Origin: Zygnema circumcarinatum SAG 698-1b
Taxonomy: Eukaryota > Plantae > Zygnematophyceae
Assembly (NCBI GenBank): GCA_037447605.1
Contig: CM074810.1
Span: 1,522,880-1,586,879, forward strand
Reading direction: 5' to 3'
Length of the DNA: 64,000 bases
The position numbers and the translations under genes are program-made. The notes under the pieces are model-generated. The model had not been told where the DNA came from and did no database searches. It saw only the letters and a list, made by a program, of their open reading frames with translations. Below, piece by piece: positions 8,781-58,925 of this stretch (position 1 is the first letter of the stretch; every line of letters begins with the position of its first letter).

Positions 8781-8916
8781 GGCGGACCTTCAACCCTAAC
8801 CTTAAACCCTAATTTTAAACCCTACAAGAGGGCAGTTCCGCCTCTGAGAAAGAGAGCCAACTTTTTAAGAGAGCTCACTTTTGAGGTTTTCACCTGGGCT
8901 CATATTAAACCTTCTT

Positions 8917-8935
8917 CCAATGATGTTTCGCCACG
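8917..8935 (+). promoter_or_regulatory. CCAAT-N9-CCACG (ERSE-type) element with a full G-box, ~140 bp upstream of the AVT6 ATG
   Basis: CCAAT-gatgtttcg-CCACG(TGG). The AVT6/YAE1 divergent intergenic region also has further CACGTG boxes (~9101, 9171, 9222) and two TGACGTCA (~9383, 9413). Function is inferred only. Confidence 0.45.
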
Positions 8936-11860: not shown

Positions 11861-14800
11861 CTAAAAGTCAATGAAGTTTGTAGAACCGTTCAAATATTGG
11901 TTTCTCCTTTCTTCCACCAAACTTTTCCCACTTTCCATATTTAGAAAATTGAACTGAAAACCATTCACTTGCACCTCCCTCACTGTCAGAGGGTTAATCT
12001 CCATAGGCATGCGCCAACTGGAATTACCCCAACTTAAACTCACATTTTCCATAGTTACACTGTCTATATATTCCATAAATATGCCCGAAATTTCATGCTT
12101 TATCATCCCTTGACATCCGGGCCTGTAATCATGTTCCCCCTCTTGGTACTGAGTCCACCGGCGCAGGTCCACCGTTAACCCTGAAAAAACAAGTCCCTGC
12201 AGACGGCTACTTGGAGATCCACTTAAGAAAATTCCGTTTTCAGCCACAATTGAAATATTGGTAAAAAATATATTTTTAATCGATCCAACATTTGAGGTGG
12301 GGTTTCGAGGACACGCCGTCACGTAGATGGGCTCAGCTCGGCCCCACCAGGAGGGGTCGTAGTAGCGGGTAGAAATGTGAATATTTTTGAATGTCACGTT
12401 TTCGATGTTACCTGTAAAAAAAAAAAGAGGGGAAAAAAAAAGGATACCGACTTGTGAACCCCAAANNNNNNNNNNCCCCCCCCCCCCCCCCCCCCTCCTC
12501 CCTCCAAAACCCTCCAGAGCCCAAAACTCAAAACCCCCCAAAACCCTTAAAACCTCGAAATCCCAACAACCCAAAACCCCCAAAACACTCAGAATCCCCA
12601 AAACCCTAAAACCCTAAACCTCGAAACCCTCAAAATTCTAGAACCCTAAACCCCCAAAACCTTAAAACCCTAAACCCTAAAACCCTAAACCCCCAAAACC
12701 CTAAAACCCTAGACCCCTAAAAACCTAACCCCCCTAAACCCTAAACCCCCTAAACCCTAAACCCCCTAAACCCTAAACCCCCAAAACCCTAAAACCCTAC
12801 ACCCCCAAAACCCTAAATCCCTAGACCCTTAAAACCCTAAAACCCTAAACCCTCAAAACCCGAAACCGTAAACCCTCAAAACCCGAAACCGTAAACCAAG
12901 CCCAAACCCCTAGACCCCTACAAGTAGGCCCTAGGCCCTAGACCTGACCTTGGTCCCGCAGCTGCAGGCCCAGGCCGCGGTGCGAGTCCTCAACGACCAA
13001 ATTCTCGAAGTGGAGGTCTTTGAAGTCGTGCTCGGTCCCGCTCCCGACCTTGACCGCGCAGGACTTTGTCTTCAGGCGGCAGTTGGTAACGGACAAATCC
13101 AGGACAGGTCCGGCGGTTGACTTGGGACAGATGGCGTCATCTCCCGTGTCGATGCGCGCGCCCTCAACGATGGTGTGATTTGAGCCGTCGATGTCGATGC
13201 CATCGTTGTTGGGAATGTTAAAGTCGCCGTAGATGGAGATGTTGGCCACATGCGTGTGTTGGCATCGAACAAAGTGGAGGCTGATGAAGGGAGGGAGGGA
13301 GGGAGGGAGGGAGGGAGGGAGGGAGGGGGTAAGGGAGGGGGGGAAGAGTGAGGAGAAGAGAGAGAGAGAGTGACGGGGAGAGAGAGAGGGAGAGAGAGGG
13401 AGGGAGAGGGGAGAGAGAGAGAGGGAGGACATACGAATCAGGATGAATCTCCAGGTTCAGATGGGAATGGTATGGAAAATTAAACCATTTCCATTTCGTT
13501 CTTTCTCGACTCCCTCTCCTCCTCCCATCACCCCCTCTCCGCCTTCCTTCCCTTAACTTTCCCGTTCTCCTTCTCCCCCTCTCCCACCCCCCTCGCCCTC
13601 TCCCTCTCTCTCCCTCCCCTTCCTCTGTTATCAGAGTAGACCTAGGGAAGGGGACTCCAACATGGGTTTTCCGCATGCTATTGAAAAATTTCTCACTCTA
13701 CACTCTACACTCACTCCTGCCATTTTTCTGCGACTAATACTCCTCCTCCAAAGAAAAACCCTACAGACAAACCATCCCTAGGGTGAGGGAAGGAGGAGGA
13801 ATGGAGGGAGGGAGGGAGAGAGAGATGGAGGGAGGGGTAGAGAGAGAGAAAGGGTAACTCGTACCACCAATATGCGGGCTCATGAAAGTGAACATTGAAC
13901 ACCTTGATATGGCTGCTTTCAATAAAGCCCACAAGGCGAGGGCGGCATTCATCTCCCAAACATTGTCCGGTCTCGTTCCAACTTACCATCACATTCTTTT
14001 GGACATCGTATTTTGTGACAAAGCTTTGGGCCTGCCCATGTATAGTTCCGCTCCCGGTAAGCGTGACATTTGTCACGCCGTCTCCTAATAGAGTGTACCA
14101 GTGGTTTCGGAGCCACGGAAAGTCCGAAAGGGAGGTCCCGCCGAGCAGGGTTGCGTTTTCCTCAATTTCGAGAACGAGGTGGGAGCGGAGGTAGAGAGTG
14201 GCTGTGGTAGTGGAAGAGTTGGATTTAGCGGAGGGAGAGGAGGGAGAGGGAGGGAGAGGGAGGGAGAGGGAGGGAGCGGGAGGGAGCGGGAGGGAGGGAG
14301 GGAGAGGGAGGGAATGGGAGTGAGGGGGAGGGAGAGGGAGGGAGAGGGAGGGAATGGGAGTGAGGGGGAGGGAGGAGGGGAGAGAGAGAGGGGAGGGGAA
14401 TGGAGGGAGAGAGGGGAAACGGAATGAGAGAGCGAGAGTGGGGAACGGGTAAGGAGGGCGGGACATAGAGGTTTATTGGGGCGTTATGTGGAACCAATCC
14501 AGGCTTGCCGCGTGTCATCATTGCAGACGTGGGACACACTGATTGGCCTAATATTCAACTGAGCCAGCTGGTTGAGCCAGCTCGAGTAACTTGCCACCTC
14601 TACTCTCTTCCTCACTCCCTCCCCCTCACTCCCATTCCCTCCCTCTTCCTCCCTCCATCCCCCTCCCTCCCTCTCCCTCCCTCCCTCCCCCTCCCTTCCT
14701 CTCCCTCACCCTCACTCCCATTTCCCTCCCACTCCCTCCCTCGTCCCCCTCCCTCCCTCTCCCTCCCACTCCCTCCTCTCCCTCCGCCTCCCTCCCTCTC

Positions 14801-15081
14801 CCTCCCCCTCCCCGCGAAGGCCCACCTGTAAGAAATCTCCCTCCTGAAGGAATTAAAACACGGCCTCCTCCCTGACACGTGTCGATCGCTGATTGAATAG
14901 CCTCCGTGTCGTAATGCAGGCCATCCCCCCGCGCACCGAATTGCGCCACCTGGCATGTGGGCCCAGCGGAAGCAGAGAGAGAGAATGCGATGAGGAGAGA
15001 GAGGAGAGAGAAGAGAGAGAAGAGAGAGAGGGGAAAGAGGAGGGGAGGAGCGAGAGGGAGGGCGGCCGCCATGGGCGCCAT
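11861..15081 (-). CDS. Secreted glycoside hydrolase family 28 (polygalacturonase-like, pectin-lyase fold), 491 aa
   Basis: Four phase-consistent exons: 15081-14826, 14201-13865, 13280-12949, 12411-11861. Hydrophobic signal peptide, FGARGDG, PNNDGIDI, TGDDAICPKS, SHRGLGLQLRDQG, WWGRAEPIYVT. Confidence 0.93.
12496..12920 (+). repeat. Degenerate interstitial telomere-like array (AAACCCT/AAAACCCC variants) in GH28 intron 3
   Basis: Dozens of AAACCCTA/AAAACCCTAA/AACCCCCTA units; the gene's sense strand carries the G-rich version. Confidence 0.85.
14230..14820. repeat. Inverted-repeat arms (purine/pyrimidine blocks) in GH28 intron 1
   Basis: 14303-14334 is the exact reverse complement of 14615-14646 (32 bp, including the distinctive core GAGGGAATGGGAGTGAGGGGGA). 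Extra core copies lie at 14348-14369 and, inverted, ~14711-14730. Confidence 0.8.
14494..14546. promoter_or_regulatory. Inverted double CCAAT/ACGT module in the GH28 intron-1 loop
   Basis: CCAAT-ccaggcttg-CCGCG-N15-CGTGG-gacacactg-ATTGG (right half is a perfect ERSE-type match). Confidence 0.45.
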
Positions 15082-15259: not shown

Positions 15260-15312
15260 CCAATGAGATATTGAAACGTGTCATAAGTGTACACGTGTCG
15301 ACTTTTCATTGG
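15260..15312. promoter_or_regulatory. Inverted double CCAAT/ACGT module in the GH28/RSH1 divergent promoter
   Basis: CCAAT-gagatattg-AAACG-N15-CGTGT-cgacttttc-ATTGG, 180-230 bp upstream of the GH28 ATG. Confidence 0.45.
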
Positions 15313-42100: not shown

Positions 42101-45100
42101 GGGAGGGGGAGGGAGGGTGAGGGAGGGAGTGAGGGAGGGGGAGGGAGGGTGAGGGAGGGAGGGAGGGAGGGGGAGGGAGGGTGGAGGGAGGGAGGGGAGG
42201 GAGGGAGGGAGGGAGAGGGAGGGGAGACAGGGAGGGAGGGAGGAGGGAGGGAGGGAGGGAGGAGGGAGGGGTGGAGGGAGGGAGTGAGGGAGGGAGTGAG
42301 GAGGGGGAAGGAGGGTGAGGAGGGCAGGGAGGGAGGGGGAGGGAGGGTGAGGGAGGGAGGGGAGAGAGGGAGGGAGGGAGGGAGGGAGGGAGGGAGGAGG
42401 GAGGGAGGGAGGGAGGGAGGGAGGGAGGGAGGAGGGAGGGAGGAGGGAGGGAGGGAGGGAGGGAGGGAGGGAGGAGGAGGAGGGAGGAGGAGGAGGAGGA
42501 GGAGGAGGGAGGGAGGGAGGAGGAGGGAGGGAGGAGGAGGAGGAGGAGGGAGGGAGGGAGGGAGGAGGAGGAGGGAGGGAGGGGAGGGAGGGAGGGAGGA
42601 GGGAGGGAGGGAGGGAGGGAGGAGGAGGGAGGAGGGAGGGAGGAGGAGGGAGGAGGGAGGGAGGGGGGAGGGGGGGAGGAGGGAGGGAGGGAGGGAGGGA
42701 GGGAGGGAGGGAGGGAGGGAGGGAGGGAGGGAGGGAGGGAGGGAGGGAGGGAGGGAGGAGGGAGGGAGGGGAGGGAGGGAGGGAGGGAGGGAGGGAGGGA
42801 GGGAGGGAGGGAGGGAGGGAGGGAGGGGAGGGAGGGAGGGAGGGGAGGGAGGGAGGGAGGGAGGGAGGGAGGGAGGGGAGGGAGGGAGGGAGGGAGGGAG
42901 GAGGGAGGGAGAGGGAGGGAGGAGGGAGGGAGGGAGGGAGGGGAGGGAGGGAGGGAGGGAGGGAGTTGGGAGGAGGGAGGGAGGGAGGGAGGGAGGGAGG
43001 AGAGGGAGGGAGGGAGGGAGGGAGGGAGGGAGGAGGGAGGGAGGAGGGAGGGAGGGAGGGAGGAGGGAGGTGGGAGGGAGGGTGGGAGGGAGGGAGGGAG
43101 GGAGGGAGAGAGGGAGGGAGGGAGGAGGGAGGGAGGAGGAGGGAGGGAGGGAGGGAGGGAGGGAGGGAGGGAGGGAGGGACGGAGGGAAGGACGGAGGAG
43201 GGAGGAGGAGGGACGGAGGATGAAGGGAGGGAGGAGGAGGGAGGGAGGGAGGGAGGGAGGGAGGAGGGAGGGAGGAGGGAGGGAGGAAGGAGGGAGGGAG
43301 GGAGGGAGGGAGGGAGGAGGGAGGGAGGGAGGGAGGGAGGGAGGGAGGGAGGGAGGGAGGGAGGAGGGAGGGAGGAGGGAGGGAGGGAGGGAGGAGGGAG
43401 GGAGGGAGGGAGGGAGGGAGGGAGGGAGGAGGAGGGAGGGAGGAGGAGGGAGGGAGGGAGGAGGGAGGGAGGGAGGAGGAGGAGGAGGGAGGGAGGGAGG
43501 GAGGGAGGGAGGAGGGAGAGGAGGGAAGGAGGGAGGGAGGGAGGGAGGGAGGGAGGAGGGAGGGAGGAGGAAGGAGGAGGAGGGAGGGAGGGAGGAGGGA
43601 GGGAGGAGGGAGGGAGGGAGGGAGGGAGGGAGGGAGGGAGGAGGAGGGAGGGAGGGAGGGAGGAGGAGGAGGGAGGGAGGGAGGGAGGAGGAGGGAGGGA
43701 GGGAGGGAGGGAGGGAGGGAGGGAGGGAGGGAGGGAGGGAGGGAGGAGGGAGGAGGAGGGAGGAGGGAGGGAGGGAGGGAGGGAGGAGGGAGGGAGGGAG
43801 GGAGGGAGGGAGGGAGGGAGGGAGGGAGGAAGGGAGGAGGGAGGGAGGGAGGGAGGGAGGGAGGAGGGAGGGAGGGAGGGAGGGAGGGAGGAGGGAGGGA
43901 GGGAGGAGGGAGGAGGAGGGAAGGGAGGGAGGAGGAGGAGGAGAGAGGGAGGGAGGGAGGGAGGGAGGGAGGGAGGGAGGGAGGAGGAGGGAGGGAGGGA
44001 GGAGGGAGGGAGGAGGAGGGAGGGAGGAGGGAGGGAGGGAGGGAGGGAGGGAGGGAGGGAGGGAGGAGGGAGGAGGAGGGAGGGAGGGAGGAGGGAGGGA
44101 GGAGGGAGGGAGGAGGGAGGGAGGGAGGAGGGAGGGAGGAGGGAGGAGGGAGTTGGAGGGAGGGAGGGAGGGAGGAGGGAGGGAGGGAGGGAGGGAGGGA
44201 GGGAGGGAGGGAGGGAGGGAGGGAGGAGGAGGAGGAGGAGGGAGGGAGGGGAGGAGGGAAGGAGGAAGGAAAGGAGGGAGGGAGGGAGGAAGGGAGGGAG
44301 GGTTTTTTTAGCTGCTTTTCAGAGACTTGGGACTATAGGGCTTGCAGATTCAACTAGTTCAGGATTCTGGGAGTCTTAGGGTTGAGGAGGAGACTCACAC
44401 TCTCTCCCTTAGCATCGATTCCCGCTCTCCCTGCCCTCCCTGCCATTTGTCGGTATCGGGTTGCATCGATAAAGTCTCTCCCTACTCGAGGACCCCTGAA
44501 AATGACTCTCCTTGCTGGAAGGTTCACTCCCGCAGCGAGAGTGGAGGTAGCAGTCAGCACTCTCACCACTCCTCCTCGGAAGCATGTCTCTACCACCTCC
44601 CTCTCCTCTACCTGCATGGAGGAAAGCGAGGGGAATAGAAGCGAGAGCGAGAGGAGAGAAGAGGAGAGAAAGGGAGAGGGGAAGGGAGAGCGAGAGAGAG
44701 GGGAAAAGTGGGGGAAGAGTTAAGGGGAGAGAGAGAAAGCGGGGGGTCGATTTAACTGCCTGTTCCTTAGACCATTTGGAGGTAAGCATTATCTAGAGAT
44801 AGACGTTTGATCCTGAGAAAGGCAATAGGACGGAAAAATCTAATCAGATATCATAACCTCCTCGCTCGCAAGCTTCCATGCATTGTTACAAAGTTCACAA
44901 AGGAAAAAAAAATATACATATATATAGAAAAAATCGCACCGTCAGCCCTGCATGATGGTAGGCCACTCCCGCAGGCAGAGTGAGAGCGAGAGTAGCGTCC
45001 AATTCTCCCGGCAGCTTCTTCAGCTCCTCTACCGCTCCCTCTACATCCTTGAAACCTTCTCCATTCGATGTATCTCCTCTCTCCACTCTCGTGAAGGGAG

Positions 45101-48100: not shown

Positions 48101-51100
48101 CCCACTCCCTCTGCTGGCGATAGTACGGATTTAAACCCCCCGTTGAACGCATGCTCCTTATTAAAAGGCATAACATTTTTACAATATTCCACATCCTCCC
48201 GAAATGCATAATCCAAAGGTGCTCTAACTACTCTCTTGCTCCCACTCAAATTCTGAGGAGGAGTACACTCGCCCTTTAATGAATTCCCATCCGCAGACAA
48301 ACACCTTTTCTTGGTAGTGAGAGAATCAGAAACCCTAAGAAAATCATTCTCTGCCGAATTGGGGAGGCTAAACTTTCTGCTATTTCCAGCATCCTCTCGT
48401 TCTTTGGGCTGCTCCGTCATTGAGATCTGAACGCGTTCTTCGTGTGAAAAGTTGTCTGCAGGCGAGAAATCAAATCGTCGTACGGGAAAGGGAGAGGCTT
48501 TATTCAATGACATGTCTCTAAAATCCTGGCAGCCATGTAATAGCTCACTCCCTCTAATTCGGATGGGAGGATTTTCTGTCATATGTGGACTATTCTTCTC
48601 TGTATTTGTAGGTAGGTGGACAGTTCCATGTGAGGTGATATTATCAATAGAAACATCTTTTTCTAATGCTTTCTCCTTTAAAGGGTCCTTTCTCTCCGCA
48701 TTCAGAGCTGCAGCTTCTGCATTTGAGCCTCCATCTTTTCTAGCTAAGACATCTTGGCAGGCTTCAAAAGCTTCTTCCCAAAATCCATCTCCCGGAGAAG
48801 ACACGGAGCAACGATAGGCCCATTCTCTGCTTTTGTTGCCGCTACTCTTGCCAGAACTGTAGCTATTGATGCTTGAATTCTTCATAGGGTCTAACTGTCC
48901 TAACTGATTGGCTGAATCTTCTTTCACTGCTGGCCTACCATCGACAGAGTTGTCAGAGTTTTTGGAGTTTCTAGACTCGAAGGGTGAGTGCTTTGAGAAA
49001 GTTTCCGGTTTAGGATGTTTAAGATCTGGGGGAAATTCTCTAACTTTCCGACTGCAGGGAACTAGTGGCATATTTACAGGCAATTGGAAAGAGTGATCCC
49101 TAGCAGATCGTTTCTTGACAAAGGGGTCTCCCACTCTCCCTGGGGATTGAACTTCACGCTTATCTATTTCAAAATGCTCTACTTTCACCTCATCAGTGCT
49201 AGCATCGCCGTCGACATTTCCCTGTAAATAATGGGTTTCGCATCTCTCCTGCATTATCACCTCTCGCACTCGACCCATGCTATCATTCTCCTTCGTTGAG
49301 CGTAACTTGGCGTTGAAAGACACATTGTCGAGTCCATCTTCAATCAACGTAGTCAAGTTTGGAACAATGAGGCTCTTTGAATTGCTCAGTACATTCATGT
49401 CTCCGCCTTTCCAAATTCCTCCCTCCCCAGCATCCTCCCGGCAATTCACCATCTGGTTTGTGTTGAAAGCTTTGACAGCTTCGGTTCTATGTGGGCCTTC
49501 TATAGATCTGATTTGCGCCCCAGAGAACATTGCAAGATTTAGACCTCTAAGTTTCATACATGAAAGAATATGTTGAAATATGAAATAGTCTGCAACTCTG
49601 CAAATAGAAATGACAATGCAACTTTGTTTGAGGAAATGCAGAATGGGTTGTTCTTTTTGTCCTACTTCATTCGCCTCCATCCATGAGGCATTCATGGATA
49701 GATGGATGAGTTCCATAATGGACATCATATGTAAAACTTCGAAATAAAGATGTGCTGAACTCACCTGCAGAAGAAGTCCAGCATGTTGTTGACCTTTTGG
49801 GTCAAAGGAGGACTGGAAGATGCTCTCTCATAGAGCAGATTTTCTTCCTCTTCTTCCCTCTCTCCGCCTCTGCTTGTCAAACAAGTTTCTTCTTTACCCA
49901 AACACTTGAATCCCGACAAGGGTCTCACAGGCTTGCTGCAAGTCGACTCGCTTGATCCCGGTTGCTCTTCTGAGAGAGATTCAGTTCTGCCGGTCTTGAA
50001 AGGCAGAGGCAGGTTTTCAGTAATACAATGGTTAGTCACATTTTGAATGGGTCTATAACTCGGGTTAACTGCATCATACTCCTTTTCTTGAGGCTGAGCT
50101 CCTCCATTAGAACCTAAACTAGCTTCAGAACTTGCTAATAAACGACTTTCATTGACAAAGTTGAAGCCTTTGTTGGGCCAATAGTTACCCCCTTGACCGG
50201 GTCTTTTGGCTTCCTCAATATGGTTTTGATGCTGAAAAGACGGAACATGAGCTAAGGGGTCGCAATAGTGAATATTTCTGCTGGGAGGAGGTCCCTCGGA
50301 TTTGGCTCCAAAGAGGGCCGCAGGAGGAGAGTGTCTGATTTTCTTGGCGGAAAAAATCTGCAATAAGACAAGGAAATATGCATAAAGAAATGAATGAATT
50401 GTTCAAAGTCTTTCCTTTGTTTGACCATGCTAAGGGATTAATGCAAGAGAAAGTCAATAAAACAAGCGAGCTTTCATGTATATAACTGCTTTTGAAACTT
50501 TCGTTATTGGGAGAAAGAGAGAGAGAGAGAGGGAGAGAGATTAGAGAGAGATAGAGAAAAGGCTACTGCAATAAGTCGCCATTTCAGTCGACGATATTGG
50601 GGGAAACGACATATATAAATGATAATTAAGAATTAACGAGAATATGATAGCAGCAGAAGGATGAAGATGCCGCTTCCACCATTGCGAATGGTCCAACCAC
50701 GTCTGAATGCTGCGAAGGCTTTTAAAAATTTGATCCCCCTCTAGCAACATGTGACGCGACAACTGGCGAGAACTAAGTTTTTGGTTTTCAGTTTTCTCGG
50801 CAGTTAGGCTTGTTTGTTTGCTCGTTGAATTAATCTGAATCGCTTCGCGCATACCTTTCTCGTCTTCAATGACCCCCCTTCAAAAATACACTATGCGAAT
50901 GCCCTAAAAGGTGTGGCTTTAAATCGATAAAACATGTGGATGACAACAATGCTGCGCATCTACGAGGAGATTTTTTTTAACCTGAGGGCCTTAAAATGAA
51001 ATTTCTGTACTCCTAACCCCCTTTATTCATTCATCCTCTCCGTTCCAATCCTGAGACACACTACAACACTCTGAATCCTCAGCTTACAATCCCCCCATGT

Positions 51101-51353
51101 AAAAAGACCCTAAAAACTACAAAATCCCTAAATACCCAGACATCTGATCATTTCAGCATGCGCCCTTGCTCATGTGCCCTTGCTCATGCCATGCCATGCC
51201 ATGCCATGCCATGCCATGCCCTGCCATGCCATTCCATGCCCATGCCGTGCAGTGCAGTCTCACCTCCGTGAGGCCGACCTGCTTCCTCTTGGACGGCTTG
51301 GCAAAGCCCTGACTGCCGGACGGCAGCGCGCCCTGGCCCTGCGCGGCAGCCAT
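29564..51353 (-). CDS. POLQ: DNA polymerase theta (Hel308-like SF2 helicase plus family-A polymerase), plant TEBICHI; ~2,660 aa
   Basis: 27 phase-consistent exons: 51353-51264, 50357-49765, ~49507-47782 (acceptor uncertain), 47514-47450, 47176-47071, 46874-46674, 46354-46100, 45910-45749, 45188-44940, 44611-44399, 40439-40230, 39753-39541, 38902-38822, 38448-38230, 37894-37676, 37365-37251, 36758-36696, 36447-34985, 34605-34396, 33620-33364, 32906-32546, 32123-31998, 31836-31484, 30824-30716, 30284-30120, 29916-29820, 29631-29564. Helicase motifs: [37 protein letters not shown]. Polymerase motifs: [45 protein letters not shown]. Confidence 0.96.
34617..34930 (+). repeat. Interstitial telomere-variant array: (TTTAGGG)3 then ~22 x TTTGGGG, decaying into degenerate units
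   Basis: TTTAGGG x3 at 34621-34641 and TTTGGGG units to ~34795, with TTTGGAG variants at 34656 and 34726. Lies in the POLQ intron 34606-34984. Confidence 0.9.
39391..39540 (+). repeat. 25-bp minisatellite x6 starting at a POLQ 5' splice site
   Basis: CGTTA landmark at 39396, 39421, 39446, 39470, 39495 and 39520; unit TTTTCGTTATTGGGTATTCTCCCAT. Confidence 0.92.
40444..44302 (+). repeat. 3,859-bp near-pure homopurine tract (GGGA/GGA repeats) filling a POLQ intron
   Basis: Continuous G/A with only scattered T/C and no N gap. It occupies almost the entire intron 40440-44398. Confidence 0.93.
46366..46542 (-). repeat. 12-bp minisatellite (GTGAGTGATGTT / ATGAGTGATGTT) x~15 just upstream of a POLQ acceptor
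   Basis: The + strand reads AACATCACTCA(C/T) in tandem; the array ends 11 nt from the exon start at 46354. Confidence 0.92.
51185..51245 (-). repeat. (GGCAT)n tract near the 5' end of POLQ intron 1
   Basis: The + strand reads ...CATGCCATGCCATGCCATGCC..., starting ~20 nt inside the intron after the donor at 51263. Confidence 0.85.
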
Positions 51354-51453
51354 GGCTGGCGAGCCCTCTGAGGGTGGATTCTGCAAGCGAGCGCGCTTTC
51401 TCATAAGAGGAAAGCGCTGCTGCACTGGCACCTTTTCTTCACAGGGGTCTCGT

Positions 51454-51507
51454 CCAATGGCGAACTGCCACGTGCGCACAATTCTCCACGTGGCGCGTTG
51501 TTATTGG
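51454..51507. promoter_or_regulatory. Inverted double CCAAT-N9-CCACG module (both halves perfect) in the POLQ proximal promoter
   Basis: CCAAT-ggcgaactg-CCACG-N16-CGTGG-cgcgttgtt-ATTGG, 100-155 bp upstream of the ATG at 51353; both halves contain CACGTG. Confidence 0.55.
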
Positions 51508-51567
51508 ATAATGCTAGGACGTAAGTGCGTAAATGGAAGGGCCTCGCCGTACGGTACTCTTCGTACG

Positions 51568-52240
51568 GGAAAATTCTATTCTCACACCTTTTTGCGTTGC
51601 CGTAGGCAAAAGCTTTGCGGTCGTTTTGATCCGTACGACGGGTTCGATTTATTAAAGATTAATGTAATGAAAATGGGGTATAGTTGCCTCGAGTCTGACG
51701 TTGCCACGTCGCACGTCCTGATTGGTTGCGTTTTGTTGGATCGAATGCGCAGAAAATGGGGTATATTGCGTACTTATTGTGTCATTTCCTCGTGTCGTTT
51801 TGTACGTACCGCGGCGTTCGATTTTGATGTTTTATGTGGTGTACGGATTCGGTTAGGTTGTGAATGATGAATTTAATGAAAATGGGGTATAGTTGCCGCG
51901 AGTCTGACGTTGCCACGTCGCGCGTCCTGATTGGTTGTGCGTTTCGTTGGATCGAATGCGCAGAAAATGGGGTATATTGCGTTCCCATTCTGTCATTGCC
52001 ACGTGTCGATACTTCGTGCGACGGCGTTCGATTTTGATGTTTTATGTGGTGTACGGATTCGGTTAGGTTGTGAATGATGAATTTAATGAAAATGGGGTAT
52101 AGTTTCCGCGAGTCTGACGTTGCCACGTCGCGCGTCATGATTGGTTGTGTGTTTCGTCGGATTTAATGCGTAGAAAATGTGGTATATCTCGTACCGATTC
52201 TGTGATTGCCACGTGTCGTTTTCTATGTACGACAGTTTGT
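51568..52240 (+). repeat. ~210-bp tandem repeat (~3 copies) with a lead-in; a dispersed copy lies at ~56655-56960
   Basis: AATGAAAATGGGGTATAG landmark at 51666, 51875 and 52085. The lead-in TTTTTGCGTTGCCGTAGGCAAAAGC plus one unit recurs at ~56670-56950. Confidence 0.88.
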
Positions 52241-52611
52241 GGTTATGATGTTTTACGGGACGTATTGTTGGAAATAGGGTATTTGCGTAGCGTGTTTAAA
52301 GTGGCCACGTGGTGCATTCCTATTGGTTAGCACGAACGGAATTAGTTATACTTCTTATCCAGTCAGAAATTGCCACGTTGGTTCTGTAGTGTGTTTTTGG
52401 ATGTTTGTTATCCAATCAGGTGTGGCCACGTAGCCCTAAAATGGGAAAAAAACCAAAAAAAAACCACACACAAACTGCTACGACAGAATGTGGCCACATT
52501 CTGTTTTCGCAGTTTGTGTGTGGTTTTAAAAAAAAAACAATCTAAATATTACAACATTTGGCCTTATGTTGTAATATTGAGAGAGTTTTTTTTTTTTTTT
52601 GTTTGTAAAAG

Positions 52612-52647
<36 letters not shown>

Positions 52648-52775
52648 TTTTTGTTGTGTTTTTGTTGTTTTTTTTTGTTGTTTGTGGTTGTTGTGTGCGT
52701 TGTTTTTTTTTTTTTGTGAAAGTCACACACGAAAATACACAATCACAAACACTCACACACACACACACACACACT

Positions 52776-53806
52776 TGTTGTTGCAGCGCCCTCCCTTGGT
52801 GGGGCTGCCACTTCTCCTCTACCTTGGGTAGAACTCGACATCTTCAATGAATTGCTCAATCACACAAAGCACACTAAATGCAAGAGAACAACTCAGCGGA
52901 AATATGAAAATGTAAGGAGAAAGCCACCAGCCTAAAACTCCTTAAGATAAAGATGAAATACAACTTGACAACACTAGAGCCAAGCTTCAAGCACCTCTTC
53001 TCAAGCTACGTGAATAAACCACCCACTACAAGCTGAACTCTTCCCACTATCTTCTTGGCCCTAAGCAAGATAGCCTCACTCCCCAATGTGAGTCACGAGA
53101 AGGTTAACTTCTACCAAACAATCTAACCCTTAAATACAATATGGCGCCAATAGTGACATTGTCACGTCACGGCCGCACATGCAACGCCTTGCAAGACCCT
53201 TATCCCGATCCTAATCTCGCGCCGTCGGATCCTCCTCAGCTTGCACGGATCCAGCACATCAATGCCGTCAGATCCGCCTCAGCCTTATCTCCATCCGAGT
53301 CCTCCACCGTAGGATCTGACTCCTCATTACTTGGCGTCATGTGGGACCCCGTAAGCCTACGAGCGCCACCGACCTAGGCCGTACAGGCCTTCCCTTTCAC
53401 CCGACACGTGGCGCCTTCCGATTCGCCACTGTCCTCCAAATGAATCATTGCTGACTCCGTACCTTGTCAGTTCTGCTCCGCGCGCTGATTCGCGCCGCGT
53501 CACTTCTCGATTTGTCGCGTCGCGCCACGTCACATCTGACTCCGCCACGCCGCGCCGCGCCACCGACCAATGTCCGTACATTCGAGGTCCTGGCCTTACA
53601 AATCGTACCACTGATTTGCTGCACCGACATTCTGATGCCTTGCCTTGCCAAATCAGACTCTGCGCGCTATACGCACACCCCTTAAAGACTTGTACGGTCA
53701 CTTAGACGGTTCGCCGTACAATGTAGACATAATGAGCACACCCCTCCTTAGAACTTAGTACCAACAACTTAGTGTACAACTAGTTCCTAACTACTTTACA
53801 CTAACA
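52776..53806 (-). mobile_element. Solo LTR (1,031 bp) inserted in a (CA)n microsatellite
   Basis: TGTTG...TAACA termini with a 5-bp target-site duplication ACACT (52771-52775 and 53807-53811). Shares blocks with the Copia LTR at 62163-63086 (TGTTAGTGT start on the - strand, CCGTACAATGT, TAAATAC...GTGACAT...TGTCACGTCACG). Confidence 0.8.
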
Positions 53807-53810
53807 ACAC

Positions 53811-53847
53811 TCTCACACACACACACACCCACACACACACACACACT

Positions 53848-53904
<57 letters not shown>

Positions 53905-53907
53905 CAC
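53811..53907 (+). repeat. (CA)n microsatellite, right part; the left part lies at ~52752-52774
   Basis: Long AC dinucleotide run flanking the solo LTR on both sides. Confidence 0.95.
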
Positions 53908-54190
53908 AAGTACAAACCTTTTTTCATCACGATCTTATGTTTCCGAAATTTTTTCGATTTTTTCGCACATCGTCATCTCCAGGACCGGGTCCTTCCGAAA
54001 TCTGTCCATGGTTATTTGCTATACAATACATGAGTGTGAGCGTAAGTACGAACCTTTTTTCATCACGATCTTATGTTTCCGAAATTTTTTCGATTTTTTT
54101 GAACATCGCCATCTCTAGGACCGGGTCCTTCCGAAATCTGTCCATGGTTATTTGCTATACAACACATAAGTGAAGCGTAAGTACGAACGT
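53908..54190 (+). repeat. 136-bp tandem duplication (2 copies)
   Basis: CATCACGATCTTATGTTTCCGAAATTTTTTCG at 53925 and 54061; GGACCGGGTCCTTCCGAAATCTGTCCATGG is present in both copies. Confidence 0.88.
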
Positions 54191-54315
54191 TATGTACATC
54201 ATGATGTCATTTTTATCATGTTTATTTTTATTTTTTTTTTGGTTATTTCGAAAACTTCCAAATGTCCAAATTTTCACATGTCCAGGATTTCAAAATGTCC
54301 AGCGATTTCTCTTTT

Positions 54316-54470
54316 AAGTCCAAAGGACTGTATCTTTAAAGTCCAGAGGACTGTGTCTTTTAAGTCCAGAGGACTGTATCTTTTAAGTCCAGAGGACTGT
54401 ATCTTTTAAGTCCAGAGGACTGTATCTTTTAAGTCGGAGAATTTGTATTCTTTAAGTCGGAGAATTTGTG
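54316..54470 (+). repeat. 23-bp tandem repeat (AAGTCCAGAGGACTGTATCTTTT) x~5 plus 2 diverged copies
   Basis: Direct reading; each unit contains the internal inverted repeat AGTCC-aga-GGACT. Confidence 0.88.
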
Positions 54471-56966
54471 ACTATGGGCCGGACAACCTAACTGACTGAC
54501 TGACTGGCCGACTGACTGACTGACTATGGACGGACAACCTAACTGACTGGTGACTGGCGGTAGTGTGGAACTGCTTATTGACTTGGTGTGGTGTGAGGCC
54601 AGTTCGCGGGTGGCTGAAATGGTAAATAGGCCAGTGACTTGTTAGTTAGTAGCCTCCCTCAACACCCTCGTTCCTCCTCCTCCTTCCTCAACACCCTCTC
54701 GTTTCTCTTCCTTCGCTCTTCCACCATTGTCCCTTTCACCACACTCCATGTTCCTTCTCCCTCCTTCCTCCTTCCTCCTCCTCCTCCACCAATCATTATT
54801 TTTCGGTTTTTCGCATTTCTCTGGTAGGAAGAAATGCAGCAAGAGCTGCAGCAGCAGAAAGGCAGAGAATTCGCAGCGACATAAGTGTTGGTTATACTGC
54901 CTTCCCTCACTCACACATGCCAACCCCCTCCCTCCTTCAACACCAAATTCAACGCAAAAACCTCCCCTTCGCCCTCAACCTCACCTCTCAGGGGCGTGGG
55001 CCGCAAAAGAAAACCTCGGCACGCGTCACTCGTCCTCTTCACTCCCTCCTCCCCCCCTCCCCTCCTCCTGGAGTTGCGGCTCCTACTCGGATTTCCATGG
55101 CTGCCCCCCTCCCCCTTCAAAGGCCTCCTCCCTTCCGGTGGGGCATCCAAAGGGCCCTCCTCATCCTTTCACCACACTCCATGTTCCTCAGCGACATAAG
55201 TGTTGGTTCTGATGGAATTCCGAACAAAACGGCGGCAAGCACCACCGGCAACTCTTCGGCTAGGCAGAGTGTAAAATGGAAATTCGGGGAGGGCGTGAAG
55301 AATAGGGAAGATGATAATGCGGTTGTTCCGTAGCGTTTAAGTCATCGAAGCGTCGTCGGCGGCACCGTCTGGTGTAGCTTGGCTGTTGGCTCTATTTCGG
55401 CTCTCCTTTTTGCGTTTTTGTAATCAGCGGATTGTGGGTTGTGATGCAGCGACGCAGCGTGGTAGCCCAGCGGCTCCGCGCGGCGTCACATTCTGTGATT
55501 AATGCAGCGGCGAGGATGCGTGCGTCATGTTAATCAATAGAGGCGGTCGGTGGTGCAAAATTCGCGGCCAGCAGCGTCGCGACACGGCGGCGTCGTTTAT
55601 CGACCATAGCAGCATCACGGTAACCTTGAATCGGCAGCGGCCGACCAGCGGCAGCGCCACCAAAAGCGAGCAATACTTGAGTAGGCGAAACAGCGATGGC
55701 GAGCGCCCGCGTGGCTCTTGTAGCGATGGCGGTTATGCGCCGTGGCGGGATCCGTCGCAGTATCGCGTAGGAGTATCCCCAGCGGAGTTCACCAGCCGTT
55801 CCGGCCGGGTGGAATTCGCCGATAATGGCGCCAGTATGGCCTTGTAGCGTCTTACATTTCCACCCAGCGGCGTCGTTAAATCACGACTTGTAGCATCGGC
55901 CTTATGGCCGAATCGTGTGGCCAAACCCGGACCCAACTGTTGACTTCCGTATTAACTTTCCTTTTTCGAGTCGATTTTTGTTGGCCCTTGTGAGCGAAGC
56001 GGCGAGAAAAGAAGCGTCGGTCGCCTCCGAATGCCGACTCTGAGAATCAAGTGGTTACGTAATGGACCACTCGTAAGTGATCGCGAATCTGAGCGAGCGA
56101 ACATCTGAACAGCGGTAGGAAAATGGCGAAAAGACACGGCGGTCAAAGGATCTAGCGGGAGAGCTGTCCGGTAGGTCAACCCGTCAGCCCGTCACCGTCT
56201 TGTACTTGAAACAGCTGTATTTGGACAATCGTTGTGGGCCGGATGTGGGTCCATTTTTATGCGATTTTGTAATCGCGGGATTGTGATTGTCGGTTGTGAT
56301 ACTTGAAACAGGATGTTTGTACGGTATGTGTTGGTAAACCGTAGCGGCTTGTGTTGTCAAACTATGGACCGCATAAGATTTGGAATGGTTCGATTAATGA
56401 CGCCGAAGCTTGATCATCGTGTTGGTTAAATTAAAACCGCTCGCGTCTTAGTGTCGTGTTTGTGAGATCTTTATTATGACTCTATTTGTAGTTTGACAAA
56501 CGGTAGCCGTTGCCGAATCCATTGTTACGACAGCCTTATTTGATGTGACTTAACAAATAGTTTTGTTCGTTGATCATTTGCGTTCAGTTCGGCTTGGACG
56601 TCGTTGGTTTCTGCTGTGCCAAGCTACGTGGAATTTCTGTCACTTCATCACGGTACAAATCTAACCTCCCTTTTTTGCGTTGCCGTAGGCAAAAGCTTAG
56701 TCATCGTTTTGATCCGTACGACGGGTTCGATTATGTTGTCAAAGATTAATTTAATGGAAATGGGGTATAGTTGCCGCGAGTCTGACGTTGCCACGTCGCG
56801 CGTGCTGATTGGTTGTGCGTTTCGTTGGATCGAATGCGCAGAAAATGGGGTATATCGCGTTCCGATTCTGTCATTGCCACGGGTCGTTTTCTACGTACGA
56901 CAGCGTTCGATTTTGATGTTTTATGTGGCGTACGGATTCGATTAGGTTGTCAAAGATGGATTTAAT

Positions 56967-58396
56967 GAAGGGTAGTGATATTTCCACCCCTTTTTTGGAT
57001 CCAAACACCCCTTCCCGGCCGGGCAGATTTCAAAAAGGATTAAAAACGGAAAATGCTTTTTTCACACCTTTTTGGAATCGATACCCACCCTCCATCAGCA
57101 GATTTTATTTTTGCGAAACAAGGAAATAACCCGTCACCCCATTTTGAATATCTCGCCTACCTGATTTTTTTTTCACGCGTGCGGTCAATCACAGCCGTCG
57201 ATTCCCTCGCAGATCGCAACACGGCAGATCACTATTTGCCCTGCAGCCGGGCTCGGTCACAGCGAATGGCACGTGCCCACGTATCCCGCCAAACTCGTCT
57301 CAACATTTTGTCCGTACAAATGTCGTACGGTCGCAACTTTGAGGAACCCAATATTTCGTACATTGAGAGCTTATACCAATCAAAGTTTTCCACGTCAAAA
57401 TATTAACACGTGGCAGATGTTGATTGGCTGAGAGATGACAATGGCACGAGATCTCGGGCCGAGGGCACGCGCGCACTCGCACGTGCGATCCGGCTTTGGC
57501 GGGACTCGTGGGCNNNNNNNNNNGGCAGGGGAGGGGAGGGGAGCGGCCGGGAGGGGCGGGAAAGAAATATTCAAAAAAGGGGGGCGATCTCCTCCCGAAA
57601 AATCCAAAATGGGGGAGGGGGGCAGAATAGCCGAAATGGGAGGGTCGGATTTCAAAAAAACAGTGGAGGGATAACCAAAAAAGGGGGGCGGTATATAGTT
57701 CTCCATATATTCGATTGGTTTGGAATTTGTGTACGTGCCCACGTGTCCCGCCAATGCCGACTGGCCCGTGCTAGAGCGCGCGTCCCTCGGCCCGAGATCT
57801 CCGCAAAATTATGAGCTGGACCGGCCAGCCTGCAGCGGCTCGCCATACTAGCAGCCAATCACCATATGCCACGTGTTATTATCAAGGACGTGGCTTCTTT
57901 TAATTGGCGCAGGGTCTAATAGAAATTACGGTATTTCGCCTTTCCGAAGCTGATAACCGTATGAAAGTTTCCCTGTTTGATAACCGTAGAGCTTTTGTTA
58001 CAGAACCACTTTGAGCCGGATTTGTTGGGACACGTGGGCACGTGCCATTCGCTGGACCGAGCCCGACTGCAGATCGAACGGCGATCTGCCGTGGTGCAAT
58101 CTGGGAGTTAGTCGACGGCGGAGATTCACCACATGTGTGAAGGACGCACACCCGCGAACGATCTCGTGGCGGACGGATCTTCCGCTCCGAGCGGATTCGG
58201 GCAAGCCGGTTCTTTTTCTCACCAAAAAAGAAATTAGAGGTAAAATCTGACCGACGGAAAAAGGTTTGTATCGATTACAGAAAGGTGTGAAAAAAGCATT
58301 TTTCGTTTTTAATCCTTTTTTTTCTAAAATAGAACCTGCCCGACGAAACAAGGTCTGTGTGTAGACAAAAAAGGTGTGAAAATAGAATTTTCCTTC
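56967..58396. mobile_element. Foldback/Mutator-like non-autonomous element with long imperfect inverted arms
   Basis: ~57015-57295 is the reverse complement of ~58015-58345 (e.g. AAAAGGATTAAAAACGGAAAATGCTTTTTTCACACCTTT; GGGCTCGGTCACAGCGAATGGCACGTGCCCACG). ~57376-57513 mirrors ~57735-57907. No transposase and no clean TSD. Confidence 0.68.
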
Positions 58397-58925
58397 GTAA
58401 CCGTACGAAACTCAATATTACCGTACGGTCTGTGGAAGGTCGGTTCTTCAGGATATCTTCCAATGAATGTTCGCCACGTATGCATAGGTTATATGTGGCA
58501 ATTTATTATGGGTAACTCTTATAGCTCCGTATTATACACTTTGAGGTTCGATACAATGTATAATACGGAAAGATGTTTGTATAATACAGTATTAATACTG
58601 TATTATACACTGTATAATACCTTAACGCAACTGTTAACAGCCGTCCAATCGGAACATAGATATGTACGAAAATTATGTACGGGAGGGGTGTACCAACATG
58701 TACGAACCAAGTCACACGTGTTGAATGTTTGGCAAGTGACGTGACTTGGCAAGTGCTGGAATTTCAATATTATAATCAATCTTTGTTCAACTAAGCACGA
58801 AAATAAAAATAACAGGCTGCGGATCAAGATCCTCGTGCGTTGCCCTTTTATAGAAATGTCTTCGAACCTTAATTATGTGAAGTGAACTGAAACGGAAACT
58901 GATCGAACACATAAGCTGAATGGGT

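What the first reader, a model, noticed from the sequence alone, without database searches (positions are those of the whole stretch)
51454..51507. Recurrent ~53-bp inverted double module CCAAT-N9-CCACG-N14-16-CGTGG-N9-ATTGG shared by promoters, an intron and a foldback element
Seen: the same architecture occurs at 51454-51507 (POLQ promoter, both halves perfect), 57376-57427 and 57855-57907 (foldback arms, all halves perfect), 14494-14546 (GH28 intron loop), 15260-15312 (GH28/RSH1 promoter) and 58460-58512 (right half degenerate). The N9 spacers differ between copies while spacing is fixed, which points to constraint on geometry. I found 11 perfect CCAAT-N9-CCACG half-sites by eye: 8917, 14528, 51454, 51489, 52308, 52412, 57376, 57409, 57855, 57889, 58460. 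About 0.1 would be expected in 64 kb on both strands at equal base frequency. Established: CCAAT-N9-CCACG is the ERSE-I consensus bound by NF-Y plus a bZIP (ATF6/XBP1 in animals; a bZIP28/NF-Y complex on ERSE-like sites in Arabidopsis). Inference: this may be an undescribed two-fold symmetric NF-Y/bZIP (or bHLH) platform in this lineage, spread by a transposon and co-opted at promoters. Alternatively it is a transposase-binding motif left behind by old MITEs.
Basis: partly seen in the sequence, partly recalled or inferred. Interest (0 to 1): 0.78.

Follow-up and report, generated by a model that had tools for sequence, protein, structure and literature searches.

The report
Mirror-image CCAAT/ACGT promoter module
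A 52-54 bp mirror-image pair of a known two-part DNA switch (a CCAAT box exactly nine bases from CCACGT) sits just upstream of ordinary genes and inside repeats in this plant-lineage alga, so here it looks like a general promoter building block, not a stress-only switch.

Summary
The window has 11 exact CCAAT-N9-CCACG sites against 0.08 expected, all at spacing 9. It has six convergent dyads at the stated coordinates (inner spacing 14-16) against 0.02 expected.

The real unit is CCAAT[C/G]A-N6-G-CCACGT, with a fixed CCAAT orientation. The flanks fit published NF-Y preferences and an ACGT-core (bZIP-type) site.

In unique DNA, three of four loci lie 101-179 bp upstream of start codons:
- POLQ
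- an AVT6-like transporter
- the divergent GH28/RSH pair

The fourth is in GH28 intron 1. The other sites lie in a 210-bp repeat family and a 1.4-kb foldback. In the foldback, all 22 core positions survived while the neighbouring bases diverged.

My best reading is a general, TATA-less proximal promoter module (NF-Y plus an ACGT-binding partner), also carried by repeats. It is not an ER-stress regulon, and a transposase site is unlikely.

Transposon spread is unsupported for AVT6 and GH28. It stays open for POLQ, whose dyad borders a 7-kb repeat block that has a mirrored dyad at its far end.

Binding and function are inferred, not shown. The scan already holds 36 notes on this motif elsewhere in the same genome. 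I found no paper describing it in algae.

The parts
51454..51507 (.). Perfect dyad CCAAT-N9-CCACG-N16-CGTGG-N9-ATTGG in the POLQ proximal promoter. Its near edge is 101 bp upstream of the POLQ start codon and 82 bp upstream of the furthest RNA-like contig end.
   Evidence: gene start
51264..51353 (-). POLQ exon 1. The start codon is at 51353-51351 and the splice donor GT at 51263-51262. The gene runs down to about 29.8 kb.
   Evidence: Sequence. Contigs of two runs end exactly at 51264, and one of them continues with unlike sequence. Pfam hits on downstream exons: DNA_pol_A, POLQ_helical, Helicase_C.
8917..8935 (+). Single exact unit followed by the palindromic G-box CCACGTGG, 137 bp upstream of the start codon (8780, minus strand) of an AVT6-like amino-acid transporter gene.
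15260..15312 (.). Degenerate dyad (halves CCAAT-N9-AAACG and CCAAT-N9-ACACG, both with an intact ACGT core) between the divergent GH28 (minus strand, start codon 15081 or 15072) and RSH (plus strand, HD_4 exons at 18.7-20 kb) genes. It is 179 bp upstream of the GH28 start codon.
14494..14546 (.). Dyad (left half CCGCG, right half exact) in the putative GH28 intron 1. It lies between a GGGAG-rich tract (14350-14466) and a CTCCC-rich tract (14590-14815).
51589..52264 (+). About 3.2 tandem units of a 210-bp repeat. Each unit carries CCAAT-N9-CGACGT (51707, 51916, 52126 on the minus strand) and a second near-site. The family's left boundary at 51588/51589 is marked by loose contig ends in all four runs.
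52269..52478 (+). Diverged fourth unit holding the exact site 52308-52326 (minus strand) and the near-site 52359. The exact site 52412-52430 (plus strand) lies in the poorly aligned end of the same stretch.
56672..56969 (+). Second block of the 210-bp repeat (88-91% identical to 51589-52090), with its site at 56794-56812.
56967..58396 (.). 1.4-kb foldback with arms about 74-80% alike and a 10-N assembly gap at 57514-57523. Each arm carries one perfect dyad (57376-57427 and 57855-57907).
58460..58512 (.). Dyad with an exact left half and a degenerate right half (two mismatches), 64 bp outside the foldback's right end (58396).
51547..51597 (+). CCGTACGG, then TTCGTACGG, then a 30-nt segment (TACG..GGAAAATTCTATTCTCACACCTTTTT). 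The same series recurs inverted at 58366-58428.
58366..58428 (-). Inverted copy of the CCGTACGG / TTCGTACGG / 30-nt segment. It lies between the foldback's right arm and the 58460 dyad.

Best explanation
The unit is a composite cis-regulatory element, CCAAT[C/G]A-N6-G-CCACGT. I infer that the CCAAT-binding trimer NF-Y sits on the CCAAT box and an ACGT-core factor sits exactly nine bases away, so the two touch and bind cooperatively as at ERSE-I. The partner is most likely a bZIP dimer of G-box type. Two such units facing each other, with CCAAT on the outside and 14-16 bp between the CCACG cores, form a 52-54 bp module.

In this alga the module works as a general proximal element of TATA-less promoters, about 100-180 bp upstream of the start codons of unrelated housekeeping-type genes. 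It reads the same in both directions, which suits divergent promoters.

Repeat families (a 210-bp tandem repeat and a foldback) carry the same unit and keep its core intact. They probably use it as their own regulatory site. Such repeats can place modules next to genes, and that may have happened at POLQ.

Shown here: sequence, geometry, excess over chance, position relative to gene starts, and core conservation. Inferred: the identity of the factors, cooperative binding and promoter activity.
For: Excess and geometry:
- 11 exact sites against 0.08 expected, all at N9.
- CCAAT-N11-ACGT occurs 17 times at N11 and at most once at each spacing from 0 to 18. ATTGG in the opposite orientation shows no peak.
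- Six convergent dyads against 0.02 expected.
- The exact full dyad occurs 3 times in this 64-kb window, once in 596 Gb of prokaryote genomes and not at all in the JGI metagenome contigs.

Fit to known factors:
- The flanks match published NF-Y preferences: +1 C or G, +2 purine in 12 of 13 (PMC6843132).
- The ACGT core is invariant, while the next base is G, C or A. This fits bZIP G/C/A-box hybrids better than a strict E-box.

Position:
- In unique DNA, 3 of 4 loci lie within 250 bp upstream of start codons. My binomial estimate for this is about 1e-5, from the coordinates.
- Contigs from two studies end exactly at the POLQ exon 1 donor and reach up to 51372, 82 bp from the dyad.
- I saw no TATA box between the dyad and the POLQ start when reading the sequence.

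Constraint:
- In the foldback arms, 22 of 22 core positions are identical against 63 of 151 spacer and flank positions (p = 3e-8).
- The diverged repeat unit keeps GCCACGT and ATTGG.
- Within a dyad the two N9 spacers are not complementary: arm complementarity is only 73-77%. The symmetry is therefore one of binding sites, not of a hairpin.

Independence:
- The promoter dyads share nothing but the motif with each other or with the repeats.

Precedent:
- Fixed-spacing NF-Y composites are established: ERSE with N9 (PMC5499772), and the human CCAAT/E-box module at 10-12 bp, also found in LTR12 repeats (PMC4889920).
Against: - No binding, chromatin or reporter data exist. The factor identities rest on motif resemblance alone.
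- More than half of the sites in this window lie in repeats.
- The POLQ dyad may itself be repeat-derived. It is in phase with the 210-bp array, and its right-half N9 shares 6 of 9 bases with the repeat unit (my count from the sequences); the local alignment is borderline.
- It also has a mirrored partner dyad beyond an inverted 30-nt segment at the other end of the 7-kb repeat block.
- One dyad is intronic.
- The runs laid on the window are contigs of uncertain type, so the transcription start is bounded, not mapped.
- Only four host gene starts could be examined.
- Close relatives could not be fetched, so conservation is untested.
Confidence: 0.6

Rival explanations
1. The motif belongs to mobile or satellite repeats, either as a transposase or other element-protein binding site or as the element's own promoter. 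On this view the gene-proximal copies are old, decayed insertions with no selected role for the host.
For: - Most sites in the window lie in the 210-bp repeat and the foldback.
- The repeat family is multi-copy in the sequencing runs, with a sharp boundary at 51588.
- The POLQ dyad abuts that array in phase.
- The 7-kb repeat block is bounded by an inverted 30-nt segment, with GTAC motifs and a dyad just outside it at each end.
Against: - The AVT6, GH28 promoter and GH28 intron sites have no similarity to any repeat beyond the motif, and no flanking inverted repeats of their own apart from low-complexity tracts around the intronic dyad.
- In the foldback the sites are internal, about 410 bp or more from either outer end, not subterminal.
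- 3 of 4 unique-DNA loci are within 250 bp of start codons.
- The flanks match NF-Y and G-box preferences.
- The dyad-plus-spacer parts of the POLQ and 58460 copies show no similarity above motif-only controls.
Confidence: 0.17
2. It is a genuine ER-stress response element (ERSE-I) marking an unfolded-protein-response regulon driven by bZIP28/ATF6-type factors with NF-Y.
For: The sequence is identical to the ERSE-I consensus with its fixed N9 spacing. That element is known from mammals and Arabidopsis (PMC5499772).
Against: - The genes served here are a DNA polymerase theta, an amino-acid transporter, a GH28 pectinase-type enzyme and an RSH (p)ppGpp enzyme. None is an ER chaperone or folding gene.
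- The density is about 140 times chance.
- The motif's presence in repeats does not fit a small stress regulon.
Confidence: 0.07
3. The architecture is the same but the partner differs. NF-Y pairs with a bHLH (USF/MYC/PIF-like) dimer on CACGTG, as in the human CCAAT/E-box module, and not with a bZIP.
For: - The distance from CCAAT to CACGTG is 10 bp, inside the 10-12 bp human NF-Y/USF window. That module also occurs in LTR repeats (PMC4889920).
- 9 of 13 independent sites read CACGTG.
Against: - 4 of 13 sites read CACGTC or CACGTA.
- The repeat family reads CGACGTGG, and two promoter halves read AAACGT and ACACGT.
- The invariant part is therefore ACGT, not CANNTG. This is the bZIP pattern.
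Confidence: 0.13
4. It is a structural or mutational by-product with no protein-binding role, for example a cruciform-forming palindrome or a biased repair product.
For: This genome is reported elsewhere in the scan to be rich in palindromic duplications (unchecked notes).
Against: - The two halves of a dyad are complementary only at the cores and at spacer positions that follow the unit consensus (73-77% overall).
- The AVT6 site is a single unit.
- Strict orientation and spacing between two non-palindromic words is not what hairpin selection gives.
Confidence: 0.03

Closest known systems
ERSE-I (CCAAT-N9-CCACG), bound by NF-Y plus ATF6 in mammals and by NF-Y plus bZIP28 in Arabidopsis
   Same: Identical consensus, identical fixed 9-bp spacer, promoter-proximal position and a fixed relative orientation (PMC5499772).
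   Different: - It serves non-chaperone genes here.
- It is about 140 times more frequent than chance.
- It mostly comes as convergent pairs.
- It is also carried by repeats.
- Stress induction and bZIP28-type binding were not tested.
Human NF-Y/USF-MAX module: CCAAT box with a CACGTG E-box 10-12 bp away, in promoters and LTR12/ERV9 repeats (PMC4889920)
   Same: A CCAAT box with CACGTG at a fixed 10-bp distance. It occurs in promoters as well as in repeat families, and NF-Y acts as the platform factor.
   Different: Here the invariant is the ACGT core, and 4 of 13 sites are not E-boxes. The lineage is the plant lineage, where G-box bZIPs are the usual ACGT readers. The inverted doubling is not described for the human module.
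Double CCAAT-box promoters of animal genes (preferred distances 19, 24-28, 35-37 and 43 bp; PMC4889920) and CCAAT arrays in bidirectional promoters (PMC1802594)
   Same: Two NF-Y sites in one proximal promoter with other factor sites between them. Such arrays are also used at head-to-head gene pairs.
   Different: Measured between the middle bases of the two boxes, the distance here is 47-49 bp. The boxes are inverted and each carries its own ACGT partner. None of the published distance classes fits.
Plant ACGT elements (G-box, C-box, A-box and hybrids) with NF-Y/bZIP partnerships such as LEC1-bZIP67 (mentioned in PMC6843132)
   Same: An ACGT core with a GCCACGTG-type flank, in a lineage where NF-Y histone-fold subunits are known to partner with bZIPs.
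   Different: In land plants these partnerships are described without a pervasive fixed-distance CCAAT partner at general promoters.

Membership tests
ERSE-I | Sequence CCAAT-N9-CCACG with invariant 9-bp spacing | tested here: met
   11 exact sites, all at N9 and none at spacings 0-17.
ERSE-I | Lies in promoters of ER chaperone or folding genes and confers ER-stress induction | tested here: not met
   The genes served are POLQ, an AVT6-like transporter, GH28 and RSH. Induction itself cannot be tested with these tools.
ERSE-I | Bound cooperatively by NF-Y and an ATF6/bZIP28-type bZIP | not testable with these tools
   No binding data are available. Only the flank preferences are compatible with NF-Y (PMC6843132).
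NF-Y/E-box (USF-type) module | CCAAT and CACGTG 10-12 bp apart | tested here: met
   CCAAT-N10-CACGT occurs 12 times at N10 and at most once at each other spacing from 0 to 25.
NF-Y/E-box (USF-type) module | An intact E-box CANNTG as the partner site | tested here: not met
   4 of 13 independent sites read CACGTC or CACGTA. Other variants are CGACGT, AAACGT and ACACGT.
MITE or foldback transposon copy (for the promoter dyads) | Similarity to other copies beyond the motif, plus terminal inverted repeats and a target-site duplication | tested here: not met
   The AVT6, GH28 promoter and GH28 intron sites have no hits elsewhere in the window. Pairwise dyad scores are at motif-only level. The only flanking inverted repeats are low-complexity tracts around the intronic dyad.
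MITE or foldback transposon copy (POLQ dyad) | Homology of the dyad to the adjacent repeat family or to the mirrored 58460 copy | tested here: inconclusive
   - The dyad is in phase with the 210-bp array and shares 6 of 9 N9 bases with the repeat unit. The local score is 28-31 against 23-28 for controls.
- The mirrored 30-nt segment is significant (48 against a shuffle maximum of 29), but the dyad-plus-spacer part is not (16 against 13 +/- 2).
Foldback element (56967-58396) | Long inverted arms | tested here: met
   The arms align over about 700 bp at 74-80% identity. A target-site duplication and the copy number were not determined.

The most novel reading that the evidence does not exclude
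In this streptophyte-type alga the ERSE-type NF-Y/ACGT composite is the default proximal promoter grammar, not a stress element. It is usually built as a symmetric 52-54 bp double module that could load two NF-Y trimers and two bZIP dimers and fire in both directions. Repeat families that carry the module seed new promoters, and POLQ is a possible case. If so, the stress-specific ERSE of land plants and animals would be a narrowed remnant or a parallel use of an older, general NF-Y/ACGT architecture.
Probability: 0.35. Interest if true: 0.7.

Novelty: new variant of a known kind. Interest (0 to 1): 0.5.

Why it matters
If confirmed, this gives a concrete, testable promoter grammar for a close algal relative of land plants. 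It specifies a fixed-distance NF-Y/ACGT unit, its preferred doubling, and its position about 100-180 bp ahead of start codons.

That would help gene-start annotation and promoter design in these algae. It would show that the ERSE architecture is not tied to ER stress. It would also offer a natural system for asking how repeats that carry ready-made promoter modules rewire nearby genes.

The practical limit is that everything beyond sequence statistics still has to be shown at the bench.

Tried and rejected
RNA evidence. They bound the POLQ 5' end and support exon 1, but they cannot map the start site or show whether the repeats are transcribed.

Conservation in relatives.
- An exhaustive representative search and a word search with the POLQ polymerase exon found nothing above 60% identity. 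They did not even find this species.
- Two of four full-length POLQ representatives were not on record.
- The three land-plant POLQ loci that could be fetched (two are near-identical) hold no CCAAT-N9-CCACG. This is a weak outgroup control only.

Wider scans. The full dyad pattern gave 0 hits in metagenome contigs and 1 in prokaryote genomes. These are useful as a chance baseline only.

Spliced models.

Other checks.
- Rfam and tRNA scans of the window found nothing.
- Common descent of the two GH28 dyads is rejected as unproven. Their inner spacers match at 11 of 15, but their N9 spacers match at only 4 of 18.
- A hairpin or cruciform role is rejected, because the N9 spacers within a dyad are not complementary.

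Literature. Searches found no description of this module in streptophyte algae. The library is open-access only.

Organism. The organism is coded in the run table. 'Streptophyte alga' comes from earlier scan notes. It is only indirectly consistent with what I saw: plant-type POLQ hits, an RSH gene and telobox-like repeats.

Full report
**Observation**

Dinucleotide-preserving shuffles predict 0.08. Varying the spacer from 0 to 30 gives 11 hits at N9 and none at 0-17.

With one mismatch allowed there are 25 hits. The extra hits are the weaker halves of the claimed dyads, a family reading CCAATCAGGACGCGCGACG, and three that look like chance.

A search for convergent pairs, allowing up to three mismatches in total and inner spacing from 0 to 40, returns the six claimed dyads. 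Inner spacing is 14 (one dyad), 15 (four) and 16 (one). It also returns one overlapping weak hit at spacing 23. Simulated sequence gives 0.02. Divergent and tandem arrangements show no preferred spacing.

**What the unit really is**

I aligned 13 half-sites chosen to avoid counting repeat copies twice.
- The base after CCACG is T in 13 of 13, so the core is ACGT.
- The first spacer base is C or G in 11 of 13 and never T.
- The second spacer base is A in 10 of 13, and a purine in 12 of 13.
- The last spacer base is G in 10 of 13.
- The unit is therefore CCAAT[C/G]A-N6-G-CCACGT, most often followed by G.

CCAAT-N11-ACGT occurs 17 times at N11 and at most once at each spacing from 0 to 18. With the CCAAT box flipped (ATTGG-Nx-ACGT) there is no peak. 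Orientation and distance are both fixed.

The middle of the spacer is free. Mean pairwise identity in N9 is 37%, and much of that comes from the three biased positions.

Within a dyad the two arms are only 73-77% complementary. The symmetry is one of sites, not of a hairpin.

**Gene map**

I ran Pfam scans of single reading frames and did not join exons.
- An Aa_trans (AVT6-like) gene lies on the minus strand with its start codon at 8780.
- A GH28 gene lies on the minus strand with its start codon at 15081 or 15072. Its first exon ends near 14.83 kb.
- An RSH gene with HD_4 exons lies on the plus strand at 18.7-20 kb.
- DNA polymerase theta lies on the minus strand from about 29.8 kb (DNA_pol_A) through 37.6-39.7 kb (POLQ_helical) and 44.4-44.6 kb (Helicase_C). 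Its 30-codon first exon is at 51353-51264, followed by GTGAGA.
- A gag/protease reading frame of a retroelement starts at 60.4 kb.

**Reads**

I laid contigs of four runs on 50500-56400. In two runs from different studies a contig covers 51264-51367 or 51264-51372, ending exactly at the predicted exon 1 donor. One of them continues for 99 letters that do not match the adjacent intron.

This fits spliced RNA and puts the 5' end at or beyond 51372. The library types are not on record and contigs cannot show a true start, so this is a bound and not a mapped start site.

In all four runs, contigs with unlike sequence to the left begin to match at 51588, at much higher depth. This marks the left edge of a multi-copy repeat.

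**Where the sites lie**

In the unique part of the window (1-51588) there are four loci:
- 8917-8935, 137 bp upstream of the AVT6-like start codon
- 15260-15312, 179 bp upstream of the GH28 start codon, in the divergent GH28/RSH intergenic region
- 51454-51507, 101 bp upstream of the POLQ start codon and 82 bp from the furthest contig end
- 14494-14546, in GH28 intron 1

Three of four loci fall inside the three 250-bp windows upstream of start codons, which together make up 1.5% of this DNA. By a simple binomial the probability is about 1e-5. That figure is my own calculation from the coordinates above.

Every host gene start that I could place in the window has a site. Reading the sequence, I saw no TATA box between the POLQ dyad and the start. 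No exact site lies in the roughly 22-kb POLQ gene body or in the mapped RSH exon region.

**The repeat copies**

A 210-bp unit is repeated about 3.2 times at 51589-52264, with a diverged fourth unit to 52478. It occurs again at 56672-56969 at 86-91% identity.
- Each unit holds CCAAT-N9-CGACGT, a second near-site, and two AATGGGGTATA boxes.
- The diverged unit keeps just these islands.

A 1.4-kb foldback at 56967-58396 has arms that align at 74-80% with many indels.
- Each arm has one perfect dyad.
- Across the two arms, all 22 core positions are identical.
- Only 18 of 31 non-core dyad positions and 45 of 120 flanking positions agree (Fisher p = 3e-8).

So the core has been kept while its surroundings decayed. 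Whether that benefits the host or the element cannot be told.

**Are the promoter copies repeat-derived?**

The AVT6, GH28 promoter and GH28 intron sites, each with 100 bp of flank, have no match elsewhere in the window. All-against-all dyad comparisons give motif-level scores, except for the two foldback arms.

POLQ is less clear, for two reasons.

First, a 30-nt segment at 51564-51597 recurs inverted at 58366-58402. Its local score is 48, against a shuffle maximum of 29. Outward of both copies lie TTCGTACGG and CCGTACGG, and then a dyad (51454-51507 and 58460-58512). CCGTACGG occurs only at these two places in the window. The 7-kb repeat block is thus bounded by a mirror arrangement. However, the dyad-plus-spacer parts themselves are no more alike than unrelated dyads.

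Second, the POLQ dyad's right half lies one 210-bp period to the left of the first unit's site. By my count from the sequences, it shares 6 of 9 N9 bases with that site. The local alignment scores 28-31, against 23-28 for other dyads and 19 +/- 3 for shuffles.

I read this as suggestive, not shown. The POLQ module may be the outermost, best-kept unit of the repeat, or the repeat may have grown out of it.

**Comparison with what is known**

- CCAAT-N9-CCACG is the ER-stress element ERSE-I. In mammals it is read by NF-Y and ATF6. It is conserved in Arabidopsis promoters with the same fixed spacing (PMC5499772).
- In human cells NF-Y sites have a preferred distance of 10-12 bp to CACGTG E-boxes bound by USF and MAX. 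This holds in promoters and in LTR12 repeats. Double CCAAT boxes fall into distance classes of 19, 24-28, 35-37 and 43 bp (PMC4889920).
- The plant NF-Y matrix prefers C at +1 and a purine at +2 (PMC6843132). The sites here show the same preference.
- In the alga the CCAAT-to-CACGT distance is 10 bp.
- 4 of 13 sites are not E-boxes while ACGT is invariant. This favours a bZIP partner over a bHLH partner.
- The two CCAAT boxes are inverted and 47-49 bp apart, which matches no published class.
- The genes served are not ER-folding genes.

So the unit is sequence-identical to ERSE-I and plausibly works like it through NF-Y plus an adjacent bZIP. It fails the functional part of the family definition, as far as gene content can show.

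**Outside controls**

- The exact full dyad occurs 3 times in these 64 kb, once in 596 Gb of prokaryote genomes and not at all in the JGI metagenome contigs.
- Land-plant POLQ loci hold no ERSE-type site.
- Close relatives of the alga could not be reached, so conservation is untested.
- Literature searches found no account of this module in streptophyte algae.

**Earlier notes of the scan**

36 notes on the same motif exist for other pieces of this genome. Follow-ups there reached the same reading: a general promoter module, partly transposon-borne, and a recurring 53-54 bp dyad. I used them as leads only. What this window adds:
- The fixed CCAAT orientation.
- The extended consensus.
- The contig-supported position at POLQ.
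- The core-versus-flank test in the foldback.
- The mirror arrangement around the 7-kb repeat block.

**Verdict**

This is a real, strongly non-random composite element of a known kind in an unusual, general-promoter and often doubled form. Factor binding and activity are inferred. A transposon origin is unsupported for two promoters and open for POLQ.

Noticed in passing
window 51185-51258 and about 8400-8590: A (GGCATG/CATGC)n microsatellite starts just after the exon 1 splice donor in two unrelated minus-strand genes: POLQ intron 1, and the presumed first intron of the AVT6-like gene (its donor was not mapped).
   Followed up: no
window 8791-8825: Three telobox-like AAACCCTA repeats lie between the AVT6-like start codon (8780) and the CCAAT/ACGT site at 8917.
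   Followed up: no
window 51547-51554 and 58421-58428: The palindrome CCGTACGG occurs only twice in 64 kb. Each copy lies 32-40 bp from a dyad and next to a TTCGTACGG. Earlier scan notes call CCGTACGG and GTAC clusters a mark of gene starts in this genome.
   Followed up: partly
window 51640-52478 and 56727-56936: Each 210-bp repeat unit carries a further conserved box, AATGGGGTATA, twice. The box also survives in the diverged fourth unit, so it may be another factor site.
   Followed up: no
window 14350-14815: The GH28 intron 1 dyad sits between a GGGAG-rich tract on its left and a CTCCC-rich tract on its right. The sequence is therefore pyrimidine-rich reading outward on both sides, like a small divergent promoter. 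This may be an internal promoter or only a low-complexity inverted repeat.
   Followed up: partly
window 52825-55208: This stretch is covered by many short contigs at 50-400 times depth with many variant letters, in all four runs. It is a high-copy dispersed repeat with no Pfam hit in the one reading frame tested (54727-55212). The stretch 55228-56400 has no contig at all.
   Followed up: no
window 40444-44302, also 34137-34392 and 36875-37239: A 3.9-kb GGGA-type purine tract lies in a POLQ intron, with shorter related tracts in other introns of the same gene.
   Followed up: no
window 25149-25844 and 26466-27161: Two reading frames of equal length (231 codons) lie 1317 bp apart. The identical one-mismatch motif hits at 25774 and 27091 show the same offset. 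This looks like a tandem duplication inside or after the RSH gene. The first frame (25149-25844), the only one scanned, has no Pfam hit.
   Followed up: no
window 14876-14900, minus strand: Read by eye on the minus strand, a two-mismatch version of the unit (TCAAT-N9-ACACGT) lies inside the GH28 exon 1 coding sequence, in the part encoding AIQSAIDTC. It is probably chance.
   Followed up: no
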